Below are positions 17,394-18,123 of a stretch of 64,000 nucleotides of DNA, one piece after another; position 1 is the first letter of the stretch; every line of letters starts with the position of its first letter. This DNA comes from Anolis carolinensis. Its lineage: Eukaryota. The notes beneath the pieces are model-generated. The model was not told the origin of the DNA. It saw nothing but the letters and a program-made list of their open reading frames with translations, and did not search any database. The DNA lies in contig NC_085841.1 in NCBI RefSeq assembly GCF_035594765.1, positions 14,615,636-14,679,635 of the forward strand, read 5' to 3'. The translations under genes and the position numbers were made by a program.

Positions 17394-17407
17394 ATCGTCC
17401 TCAAAAC
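17394..17407 (-). promoter_or_regulatory. Non-tRNA primer-binding site, complementary to LTR site 17838-17851 (putative self-priming)
   Basis: Minus strand GTTTTGAGGACGAT directly follows the LTR, with no TGG; the LTR RNA contains AUCAUCCUCAAAAC. Confidence 0.7.
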
Positions 17408-18123
17408 TGTGCCGTCCGCCGGACAATAAAAAGCTATAAAACTGAAACGTGCTGTCCTTTATCCGGGCGAACTGCAAATCCCTATAAGCTGTCCTATAGA
17501 TATTGAACGACTGAGTCTGGATAACTTCAAAAAAGGATGTTTATTCATACAAGGTTGTAAACCTGGCACAGATCTTAAAGTTGCAGAAAATGAAACAAAT
17601 TTCCATAGGTTTTAGTTGCAGAATTATCCCTGGTTCCAGAAGGCAAAAGTGATTATAAAACCACTATACCCTAATCACGCTGCCTATATTAGAAGGAGAA
17701 ACTCTTTCCTTCCCTATCTTTACAGCAAAGATTAGTTCTAGAAGCGATGGAATAACTTTGCTCCTCTAACTAGATTTCCTATTCCAGATCAATATAATTC
17801 AATACTTATCTAATTTGGATAGGCTTAGATTGGCCTGGTTTTGAGGATGATTTGTCCCAGTTAGCCTTGCACAGCTCCAGCACGTTGGAAGACTATAGCC
17901 AGAATGAAACTCTAAAATGGAGACTAGACCCTGGTAAAAAGGGCGGTCCTAAGATGTTGCACTCTTTGACCAATCACTGCAAAGAAAACTGCAGCCAGCT
18001 CTTGCAGATTCCAAGCCACTTTTCCTAGGCTTTTGCAGCCAGAGGCTCAAACAAAATGTAAAGGAGGGAAAACAAACAAACGACCAATAGGTAAGGCAAA
18101 CCATCGTCCTGGGGGACGGAACA
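17408..18123 (-). repeat. 5' LTR (716 bp)
   Basis: TGT...ACA; CCAAT motifs at 17970 and 18084 and GC box at 17941 in the putative U3; minus-strand AATAAA at 17540-17545. Confidence 0.97.

What the first reader, a model, noticed from the sequence alone, without database searches (positions are those of the whole stretch)
17394..17851. BEL/Pao element with a tRNA-less PBS that pairs with its own LTR: Tf1-like self-primed reverse transcription
Seen: directly after the 5' LTR the element RNA reads GUUUUGAGGACGAU (17407-17394). There is no UGG to pair with a tRNA CCA end. Inside the LTR the RNA reads AUCAUCCUCAAAAC (17851-17838; 3' LTR copy 11956-11943). The two pair at 13/14 positions with 10 contiguous. 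Pairing stops exactly at the LTR boundary, so a 3' end at 17838 would be extended straight into the terminal TGT. The site lies downstream of the CCAAT/GC boxes (18084, 17970, 17941) and upstream of the AATAAA (17545-17540), where the start of R is expected. A start at the CA initiator A (17848) would give an 11-nt primer. Established: S. pombe Tf1 primes minus-strand synthesis with the first 11 nt of its own mRNA after RNase H cleavage, and this is proposed for related Tf1/sushi-group Gypsy elements. Inference: a BEL/Pao lineage uses the same mechanism; I do not recall this being established for Belpaoviridae. The rough chance of an anchored 10-nt match in 716 nt is 716/4^10, below 0.001. Caveat: the only TATA-like word (CTATAG, 17898-17893) lies 45-50 nt upstream.
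Basis: partly seen in the sequence, partly recalled or inferred. Interest (0 to 1): 0.92.

Follow-up and report, generated by a model that had tools for sequence, protein, structure and literature searches.

The report
Self-primed BEL/Pao retrotransposon in anole
A young BEL/Pao retrotransposon of the green anole has no tRNA-type primer site; the bases right after its 5' LTR pair with a short segment inside the LTR, and most of its relatives in lizard, ticks and bivalves keep this pairing through matching changes, so this branch probably starts reverse transcription with a piece of its own RNA, a mechanism known so far from other retrotransposon superfamilies.

Summary
The element lies on the minus strand at 11513-18123, with identical 716-bp LTRs and a 5-bp target duplication. 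The 14 bases after the 5' LTR (17407-17394) pair at 13/14 positions, 10 of them contiguous and anchored at the LTR edge, with LTR bases 17851-17838. Shuffling gives P about 0.001. There is no TGG in the first 40 bases after the LTR, which excludes a tRNA 3'-end primer site.

I fetched ten independent related families. Seven show an anchored 8-14 nt pairing between different PBS sequences and a matching segment of their own LTR, each with P at or below 0.007. These are three anole families with unrelated LTRs, two ticks and two bivalves. A cichlid, a frog and a crinoid show only 6 bp, which is not significant. A distant fly element shows none.

Folding places the duplex in the minimum-energy structure with probability 0.95 or more in the anole families. 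Tf1-like self-priming is the best explanation, at about 0.75.

The transcription start, the RNase H cut and a full host tRNA comparison were not tested. The available runs are contigs only.

The ICTV profile describes Belpaoviridae as tRNA-primed, and I found no paper reporting self-priming for them. This scan reached the same reading earlier on another anole copy (s1-528321).

The parts
17408..18123 (-). 5' LTR, 716 bp, TGT...ACA
   Evidence: 100% identical to the 3' LTR. A 5-bp duplication AATAA flanks the element.
11513..12228 (-). 3' LTR, 716 bp
17394..17407 (-). Primer-binding site GTTTTGAGGACGAT, directly after the LTR. The conserved core is 17407-17398. There is no TGG within 40 nt.
   Evidence: Other copies of the family vary at positions 10 and 11 only (17398 and 17397, and L001).
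17838..17851 (-). Candidate self-primer ATCATCCUCAAAAC inside the 5' LTR (LTR positions 273-286). Its 3' end, C at 17838, pairs with the first base after the LTR.
   Evidence: No variant was seen here in contigs of four runs.
11943..11956 (-). The same segment in the 3' LTR. It would restore the primer sequence after the first strand transfer.
   Evidence: LTRs identical
17540..17545 (-). AATAAA, the only canonical polyadenylation signal in the LTR. It lies 293 nt downstream of the primer segment's 3' end.
12229..12237 (-). Purine-rich tract AGCGGGGAG abutting the 3' LTR (plus-strand primer)
   Evidence: The relatives all carry (G/C)GGGGAG or GGGAG at this place.
12421..16590 (-). Single 1389-aa ORF, Gag (DUF1759)-protease-integrase. 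The reverse transcriptase/RNase H region is missing.
   Evidence: The ORF aligns to tick protein P0014 residues 339-995 and 1516-1821 only.
16591..17393 (-). Long untranslated leader between the PBS and the ORF start

Best explanation
The element is a recently inserted, RT-less (non-autonomous) member of a BEL/Pao clade that primes minus-strand DNA synthesis with a piece of its own RNA instead of a tRNA.

Proposed mechanism:
1. In the genomic RNA, a roughly 10-nt segment in the LTR-derived 5' part (UCCUCAAAAC, 17847-17838, extendable to 14 nt in a sister copy) folds back onto the 10-14 bases that directly follow U5.
2. This duplex closes the whole R-U5 domain.
3. A cut after C17838 leaves a 3'-OH paired to the first base after the LTR. 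The cut is presumably made by the RNase H of an autonomous relative acting in trans.
4. Extension of that 3'-OH copies U5 and R as strong-stop DNA.
5. The 3' LTR copy of the segment restores the sequence after strand transfer.

What is shown: the complementarity, its exact anchoring at the LTR edge, its covariation across families, the absence of a tRNA-3'-end site, and the predicted fold.

What is inferred: that the duplex primes, that the segment is at or near the mRNA 5' end, and that RNase H makes the cut.
For: 1. The anchored pairing is 10 contiguous and 13/14 overall, with shuffle P about 0.001.

2. A sister copy, L001, has T instead of C at PBS position 11 and pairs over 14 contiguous bases.

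3. Two further anole families have LTRs with no detectable similarity to this one. Their PBSs differ (GTGCTGAGAGG and TTGAAATAGG), and each matches its own LTR over 11 and 10 nt at a similar relative position, 0.31-0.42 of the LTR.

4. Four invertebrate relatives show anchored pairings: Ornithodoros 11 nt, Ixodes 13 nt, Mya 9 nt and Pecten 8 nt. All have P at or below 0.007.

5. PBS positions 3-10 show 3-4 different Watson-Crick pair types across families.

6. The pairing begins at the first base after the LTR in every case. LTR edges were fixed by 5-bp target duplications.

7. Within families, only positions 10-11 and beyond vary. This fits a short primer.

8. The duplex is in the minimum-energy fold with pair probability 0.95 or more in anole families 1 and 3, whatever 5' or 3' cut is used, and 0.63-1.00 in family 2.

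9. There is no TGG within 40 nt of the LTR. A nested unrelated LTR element in L013 carries a normal TGG-type site.

10. The mechanism is established for Tf1 and predicted for other groups (PMC4600332, PMC6317226).
Against: - No transcription start is known. The runs found are Logan contigs of uncertain RNA status and show neither starts nor ends. There is no TATA box 25-35 nt upstream of the segment.
- Three related families (cichlid, Hyla, crinoid) have only 6 anchored pairs, which is not above chance on their own.
- The duplexes are A/U-rich. An energy-based anchored test did not separate them from mock anchors (P = 0.09 for the window).
- Host tRNAs could not be compared, so an internal tRNA fragment was not excluded directly.
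- This copy has no RT/RNase H, so everything must act in trans.
- The window copy carries a mismatch at position 11.
Confidence: 0.75

Rival explanations
1. The LTR segment and the post-LTR bases do pair in the RNA, but for another purpose such as closing the R-U5 domain for packaging, dimerisation, translation control or strand transfer. Reverse transcription would then be primed by something else not yet recognised.
For: The duplex is predicted to close a self-contained R-U5 domain. A distant fly BEL element has a 77-nt LTR-leader inverted repeat that is not anchored at the LTR edge, so LTR-leader pairing can exist without a primer geometry. No biochemical evidence for priming exists.
Against: In all seven families the pairing starts exactly at the first base after the LTR. 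A primer 3' end needs this, but a structural helix does not. No alternative primer site is visible: there is no TGG within 40 nt. Duplex length is held at about 8-14 nt, as in Tf1.
Confidence: 0.13
2. A host RNA is the primer, for example an internal or processed tRNA fragment as in copia, or another small RNA. The LTR segment only resembles it.
For: Host tRNAs could not be searched with these tools, and the window has no tRNA gene. Several distant relatives share a similar PBS start, GT(G/A)AAAA, as a conserved host primer would predict.
Against: Three families in the same host have three different PBSs, and each is mirrored in its own LTR. Family-specific extensions of the pairing (Ixodes 13 nt, Ornithodoros 11 nt) are matched by the LTR. 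A host primer gives no reason for any LTR complement. No PBS begins with TGG.
Confidence: 0.07
3. The match in this element is a chance complement in an A/T-rich stretch.
For: The sequence is of low complexity (TTTT/AAAA). The energy-based test was not significant. About 0.2% of mock anchors reach 10 contiguous pairs.
Against: Shuffle P is about 0.001 for this copy. The same anchored feature occurs in six further independent families, each with P at or below 0.007. A sister copy has 14 contiguous pairs.
Confidence: 0.02

Closest known systems
Tf1/Tf2/Tj1 of fission yeasts and the Tf1/sushi group of Ty3/gypsy elements (self-primed reverse transcription; PMC4600332, PMC6317226)
   Same: There is no tRNA PBS. 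A short (about 10-11 nt) segment of the element's own LTR-derived RNA is complementary to the site directly after U5. The pairing closes an R-U5 structure. The PBS and the segment covary among relatives.
   Different: The superfamily is different: BEL/Pao proteins (DUF1759, Pao peptidase/RT, DUF5641) and no chromodomain integrase. It is not shown that the segment is the first bases of the mRNA. In the anole families the looped-out R-U5 is about 400-480 nt. No biochemical evidence exists.
Canonical BEL/Pao (Belpaoviridae) as described by ICTV (PMC8742986): PBS complementary to the 3' end of tRNA-Arg or tRNA-Gly
   Same: Protein domains, TGT...ACA LTRs, 5-bp target duplication, purine tract before the 3' LTR and a single Gag-Pol frame.
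   Different: There is no tRNA-type PBS. The PBS pairs with the element's own LTR instead. This copy also lacks RT/RNase H.
Plant Ty1/copia TAR lineage (Houba, Osr-1) and the Tcn1 clade of chromoviruses, for which self-priming is predicted from sequence (PMC6317226)
   Same: The prediction rests on the same kind of evidence: PBS-LTR complementarity without a tRNA match.
   Different: Other superfamilies and other hosts (plants, fungi).

Membership tests
BEL/Pao (Belpaoviridae) | Gag-Pol with BEL/Pao-specific domains (DUF1759 gag, Pao peptidase/RT PF05380, DUF5641) | tested here: met
   The window ORF hits DUF1759 at E 5.7e-5, just under Pfam's cut-off, and hits rve weakly. The ORF is 35-50% identical over 950 residues to tick P0014, which carries PF05380, rve and DUF5641. 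The window copy itself lacks the PF05380 region and the C-terminal DUF5641.
BEL/Pao (Belpaoviridae) | LTRs with TGT...ACA ends, a short target duplication, and a purine tract before the 3' LTR | tested here: met
BEL/Pao (Belpaoviridae) | 18-nt PBS complementary to the 3' end of a host tRNA (ICTV profile, PMC8742986) | tested here: not met
   There is no TGG in the 40 nt after the LTR. The same holds for the relatives, whose PBSs begin with GT or TT. Comparison with actual anole tRNAs was not possible.
Tf1-type self-priming (mechanism) | A site directly after U5 that is complementary to a segment of the element's own LTR | tested here: met
   10 contiguous pairs and 13/14 overall, anchored, P about 0.001
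Tf1-type self-priming (mechanism) | Complementarity kept in relatives through changes on both sides | tested here: met
   7 of 10 independent families, with 3-4 pair types at positions 3-10. Three families are weak, with 6 bp.
Tf1-type self-priming (mechanism) | The complementary segment is the first bases of the mRNA | not testable with these tools
   Only contigs of uncertain RNA status were available. The segment lies downstream of the ATTGG/GC boxes and upstream of AATAAA. An AGTT motif abuts the segment in six relatives, but this was noticed after the fact.
Tf1-type self-priming (mechanism) | RNase H cuts the RNA duplex to release the primer 3'-OH | not testable with these tools
   This needs biochemistry. 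This copy encodes no RNase H.
Tf1/sushi group of Ty3/gypsy (phylogenetic membership) | Ty3/gypsy-type Pol and chromodomain integrase | tested here: not met
   All homologues found are BEL/Pao proteins. There were no gypsy-type domain hits.

The most novel reading that the evidence does not exclude
Self-priming is the ancestral way of starting reverse transcription for a whole BEL/Pao clade spread over squamates, ticks and bivalves, and perhaps fish, frogs and echinoderms with shorter duplexes. Belpaoviridae would then be the third LTR-retrotransposon superfamily with tRNA-independent priming, contrary to the family's current description. The cis signals would also suffice for an RT-less derivative to be mobilised in trans.
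Probability: 0.6. Interest if true: 0.7.

Novelty: new variant of a known kind. Interest (0 to 1): 0.62.

Why it matters
Priming by a host tRNA is written into the definition of Belpaoviridae (PMC8742986). PBS-based annotation pipelines look for tRNA 3' ends, so they will score these elements as lacking a PBS.

A self-primed BEL/Pao clade would have several consequences:
- Tf1-type priming would have arisen, or been kept, in all three LTR-retrotransposon superfamilies. This bears on the idea that hairpin or self-priming preceded tRNA priming (PMC3601003).
- These elements would escape host defences aimed at the PBS. The preprint 10.1101/2025.05.12.650695 describes silencing of tRNA-primed elements by 3'-tRNA fragments (abstract seen). 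KRAB zinc-finger proteins that bind a PBS (PMC4587795) may be a further case, but I did not test either.
- It would give a simple sequence rule, an anchored PBS-LTR complement, for annotating these elements and for locating the likely start of R.

The anole copies are very young, with identical LTRs, so the mechanism could be studied in a living vertebrate lineage.

Tried and rejected
1. Reads. The look-up of sequencing runs returned only Logan contigs whose RNA status is a guess. Laid on 17200-18180, they cover the whole LTR, break at variant sites and run into both internal and flanking DNA. They therefore say nothing about a transcription start or a poly(A) site. They did show which PBS positions vary among copies.

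2. Energy-based anchored duplex test. The A/U-rich duplexes are not more stable than the best duplexes of random internal 16-mers with the LTR (P = 0.09 for the window and 0.14-0.94 for others). I dropped this as a poor discriminator. The contiguous-pair statistic is the one used.

3. Unanchored search in the three weak families (cichlid, Hyla, crinoid). No complement of 8 or more nt exists anywhere between the first 60 post-LTR bases and the LTR. A 6 bp + 2x2 loop + 4-6 bp reading is possible for cichlid and Hyla but is not significant.

4. Rfam scan of 11000-18600. It gave only sub-threshold chance hits and no tRNA-like or known RNA element.

5. tRNA genes. There are none in the window. No anole tRNA set is reachable with these tools, so the internal-tRNA rival was argued only indirectly.

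6. Outgroup. The single distant BEL element fetched (Eupeodes) has neither a TGG site nor an anchored match. It shows an odd 77-nt inverted repeat instead, so it is a poor example of a canonical tRNA-primed control.

7. Literature. Searches combining Pao/BEL/Bel-Pao with self-priming found no report for this superfamily. The Sinbad paper and the BEL/Pao survey do not discuss primer sites. Subscription-only papers, such as those on Suzu and Pao, were not readable.

8. Superfamily assignment. I did not assign the clade to a named BEL/Pao superfamily (Sinbad, Suzu and so on) because no reference sequences were at hand.

Full report
**The sequence**

The finding sits in an LTR retrotransposon on the minus strand, 11513-18123 (6611 bp).
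- The two LTRs are 716 bp, 100% identical, and run TGT...ACA.
- The element is flanked by AATAA on both sides inside an (AAT)n run.
- AGCGGGGAG abuts the 3' LTR.
- Between the LTRs there is an 817-nt leader, then one open frame of 1389 aa (16590-12421).
- The frame hits DUF1759 weakly and the integrase core weakly.
- Its best database matches are Anolis carolinensis proteins, so the genome is the green anole.
- Against a complete tick relative (P0014, 2045 aa, with Pao peptidase/RT, rve and DUF5641), the ORF aligns to residues 339-995 and 1516-1821 only.
- The reverse transcriptase/RNase H part is therefore missing. It is also missing from the other annotated proteins of this family.
- This copy is a non-autonomous BEL/Pao element that moved very recently.

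**Check of the observation**

Every coordinate in the finding is right.
- The bases after the 5' LTR are GTTTTGAGGACGAT (17407-17394).
- LTR positions 273-286 read ATCATCCTCAAAAC (17851-17838).
- They pair at 13 of 14 positions, with 10 contiguous Watson-Crick pairs that start at the very first base after the LTR.
- In 20,000 dinucleotide-preserving shuffles of the LTR, an anchored run of 10 or more occurred at 0.00075 and a 13/14 match at 0.00005.
- Among 5,165 mock anchors from the element's own interior, 11 reached 10 contiguous.
- There is no TGG in the 40 bases after the LTR, so a site for a tRNA CCA end is absent.

**Relatives**

The protein search found relatives in anole, fish, frogs, ticks, bivalves, a gastropod and a crinoid. 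I fetched the DNA for twelve of them. LTR edges were fixed by self-alignment and by the 5-bp target duplication present in each case. I then asked the same anchored question of each: do the bases that follow the LTR pair, from the first base on, with a segment of that LTR?

| Element | Contiguous pairs | PBS or note |
|---|---|---|
| Anole family 1, window | 10 | GTTTTGAGGACGAT |
| Anole family 1, sister copy L001 | 14 | T instead of C at position 11 removes the mismatch |
| Anole family 2, L002 | 11 | GTGCTGAGAGG |
| Anole family 2, second copy L013 | 10 | differs at position 11 |
| Anole family 3, L009 | 10 | TTGAAATAGG |
| Ornithodoros | 11 | GTGAAAAAACG |
| Ixodes | 13 | GTAAAAGACGGTG |
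| Mya | 9 | |
| Pecten | 8 | |
| Astatotilapia | 6 | not significant |
| Hyla | 6 | not significant |
| Anneissia | 6 | not significant |

- Shuffle P values are 0.0003-0.007 for the seven families in the upper rows. They are 0.2-0.6 for the three weak ones and for the distant Eupeodes element.
- The LTRs of the three anole families have no detectable similarity to each other.
- Even so, the paired segment sits at a similar place in each, 0.31-0.42 of the LTR.
- Across the ten independent families, PBS positions 3 to 10 each show three or four different Watson-Crick pair types.
- On a quick tree, the anole families form one clade. It is sister to a clade of bivalves plus ticks, crinoid, cichlid and frog, and the fly element is very distant.
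- The feature is therefore found on both sides of the deepest split of this group.

**Variation within families**

- Contigs of four public runs show other copies of family 1 that differ at 17398 and 17397, which are PBS positions 10 and 11.
- No variant was seen at positions 1-9 or in the LTR segment.
- The two family 2 copies differ at position 11.
- The constrained duplex is thus about 9-10 bp, close to the 11 of Tf1.

**Folding**

The duplex is part of the minimum-energy structure in the seven supporting families.
- In anole families 1 and 3 its mean pair probability is 0.95-1.00, and in family 2 it is 0.63-1.00. This holds whether the RNA is cut at the segment, 4, 20 or 60 nt upstream of it, or 4 to 200 nt beyond the PBS, and although it closes a loop of 400-480 nt.
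- In the ticks and bivalves, R-U5 is only about 75-110 nt. It folds into one or two hairpins closed by the duplex.
- The bivalve duplexes are less robust: Mya's is lost when 20 nt or more of upstream sequence is included, and Pecten's weakens at 60 nt.

**Interpretation**

A helix that always starts at the first base after U5 is what a primer needs. Its 3' end must sit there so that the first base copied is the last base of U5.
- A host primer gives no reason for a complement in the LTR. It also cannot explain three different sites in one host.
- A purely structural helix gives no reason for the exact anchoring.
- The best reading is therefore self-priming of the Tf1 kind. In Tf1, a 5' segment of the element's mRNA anneals to the PBS and is cut to serve as primer (PMC4600332).
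- Self-priming is established for Tf1. It is predicted for the Tf1/sushi and Tcn1 groups of Ty3/gypsy and for the TAR lineage of Ty1/copia (PMC6317226).
- Because the primer is copied into plus-strand DNA in retroelement replication (established knowledge), primer and PBS would be homogenised each cycle. This would explain near-perfect complementarity in young copies. That step is inference.
- This copy has no RT or RNase H, so the enzymes must come from an autonomous relative.

**What is not shown**

- I could not map a transcription start. The only runs found are contigs of uncertain RNA status.
- The segment lies downstream of two ATTGG boxes and a CCGCCC box, and 293 nt upstream of the only AATAAA. 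This is compatible with the start of R but does not prove it.
- In six relatives an AGTT motif abuts the 5' side of the paired segment. This might be an initiator, but I noticed it after the fact.
- I could not compare the PBS with anole tRNAs, so an internal tRNA fragment is excluded only by argument.
- Three related families have only 6 anchored pairs. The earlier scan note says fish and frogs show the pairing, but my one fish and one frog do not support that on their own.
- An energy-based test did not discriminate.

**Comparison with what is known**

- By proteins and LTR anatomy the element is BEL/Pao, not Tf1/sushi.
- Searches of the held library for BEL/Pao together with self-priming found no report. 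Older subscription papers could not be read.
- I rate this as a new variant of a known kind: a known mechanism in a superfamily where it is not described.
- The same conclusion was reached earlier in this scan on another anole copy (s1-528321). Several first-reader notes describe the same feature elsewhere in the genome.

**Limits kept**

Stretches of N in the window and in L010 were left as they are. A genetic test that would need an engineered active element is listed under referred steps.

Noticed in passing
window 12421-16590 (minus strand): The single ORF is an in-frame Gag-protease-integrase fusion with the reverse transcriptase/RNase H part missing (it aligns to tick P0014 residues 339-995 and 1516-1821 only). 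The other annotated family 1 proteins (P0001-P0004) lack the same region with slightly different end points. Some of these are spliced gene models, so the end points are unsure.
   Followed up: partly
L012:3628-3704 and L012:3865-3941 (Eupeodes corollae BEL-type element): There is a 77-nt, 99% complementary inverted repeat between the middle of the LTR (positions 125-201) and the leader (bases +13 to +89 after the LTR). The element has identical LTRs and no TGG-type PBS. It is not anchored at the LTR edge. It could be a different fold-back design or a rearranged copy.
   Followed up: partly
L013:1085-6053: A second, unrelated LTR element (LTRs 1399-1813 and 5596-6010, 100% identical) is nested in the 5' LTR of an anole family 2 copy. 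It has a classical TGG-type site, TGGTGACCCCGACGTGAT, 5 nt after its LTR. From memory this resembles the tRNA-Trp 3' end, but I did not verify that. It shows that tRNA-type sites are easy to see in the same genome.
   Followed up: no
L009:3807-3927: In anole family 3 the LTR segment that pairs with the PBS lies in a 121-bp stretch that is present in the 5' LTR and absent from the 3' LTR of this older copy (LTRs 98% identical). The stretch is bordered by ATAAAGACC-type repeats, so a slippage deletion in the 3' LTR is likely.
   Followed up: partly
L003 (Astatotilapia) and L005 (Ornithodoros), first 10 bases after the 5' LTR: A cichlid element and a soft-tick element share the same 10 post-LTR bases (GTGAAAAAAC) and the same LTR end (CAGAATA). 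Only the tick LTR carries the full complement. On the tree, ticks, a crinoid, a fish and a frog fall in one poorly resolved group. This raises the question of transfer between hosts.
   Followed up: no
window 17139-17171 and 16842-16874: A 33-bp direct repeat (94% identical) lies inside the 817-nt leader upstream of the ORF. Its function is unknown.
   Followed up: no
window 17360 (minus strand, 47 nt after the PBS start): Contigs of four runs share the LTR and PBS. They then diverge into a different, A-rich internal sequence below 17360, at higher depth than the window's own version. A more abundant subfamily therefore uses the same LTR and PBS with another interior.
   Followed up: no
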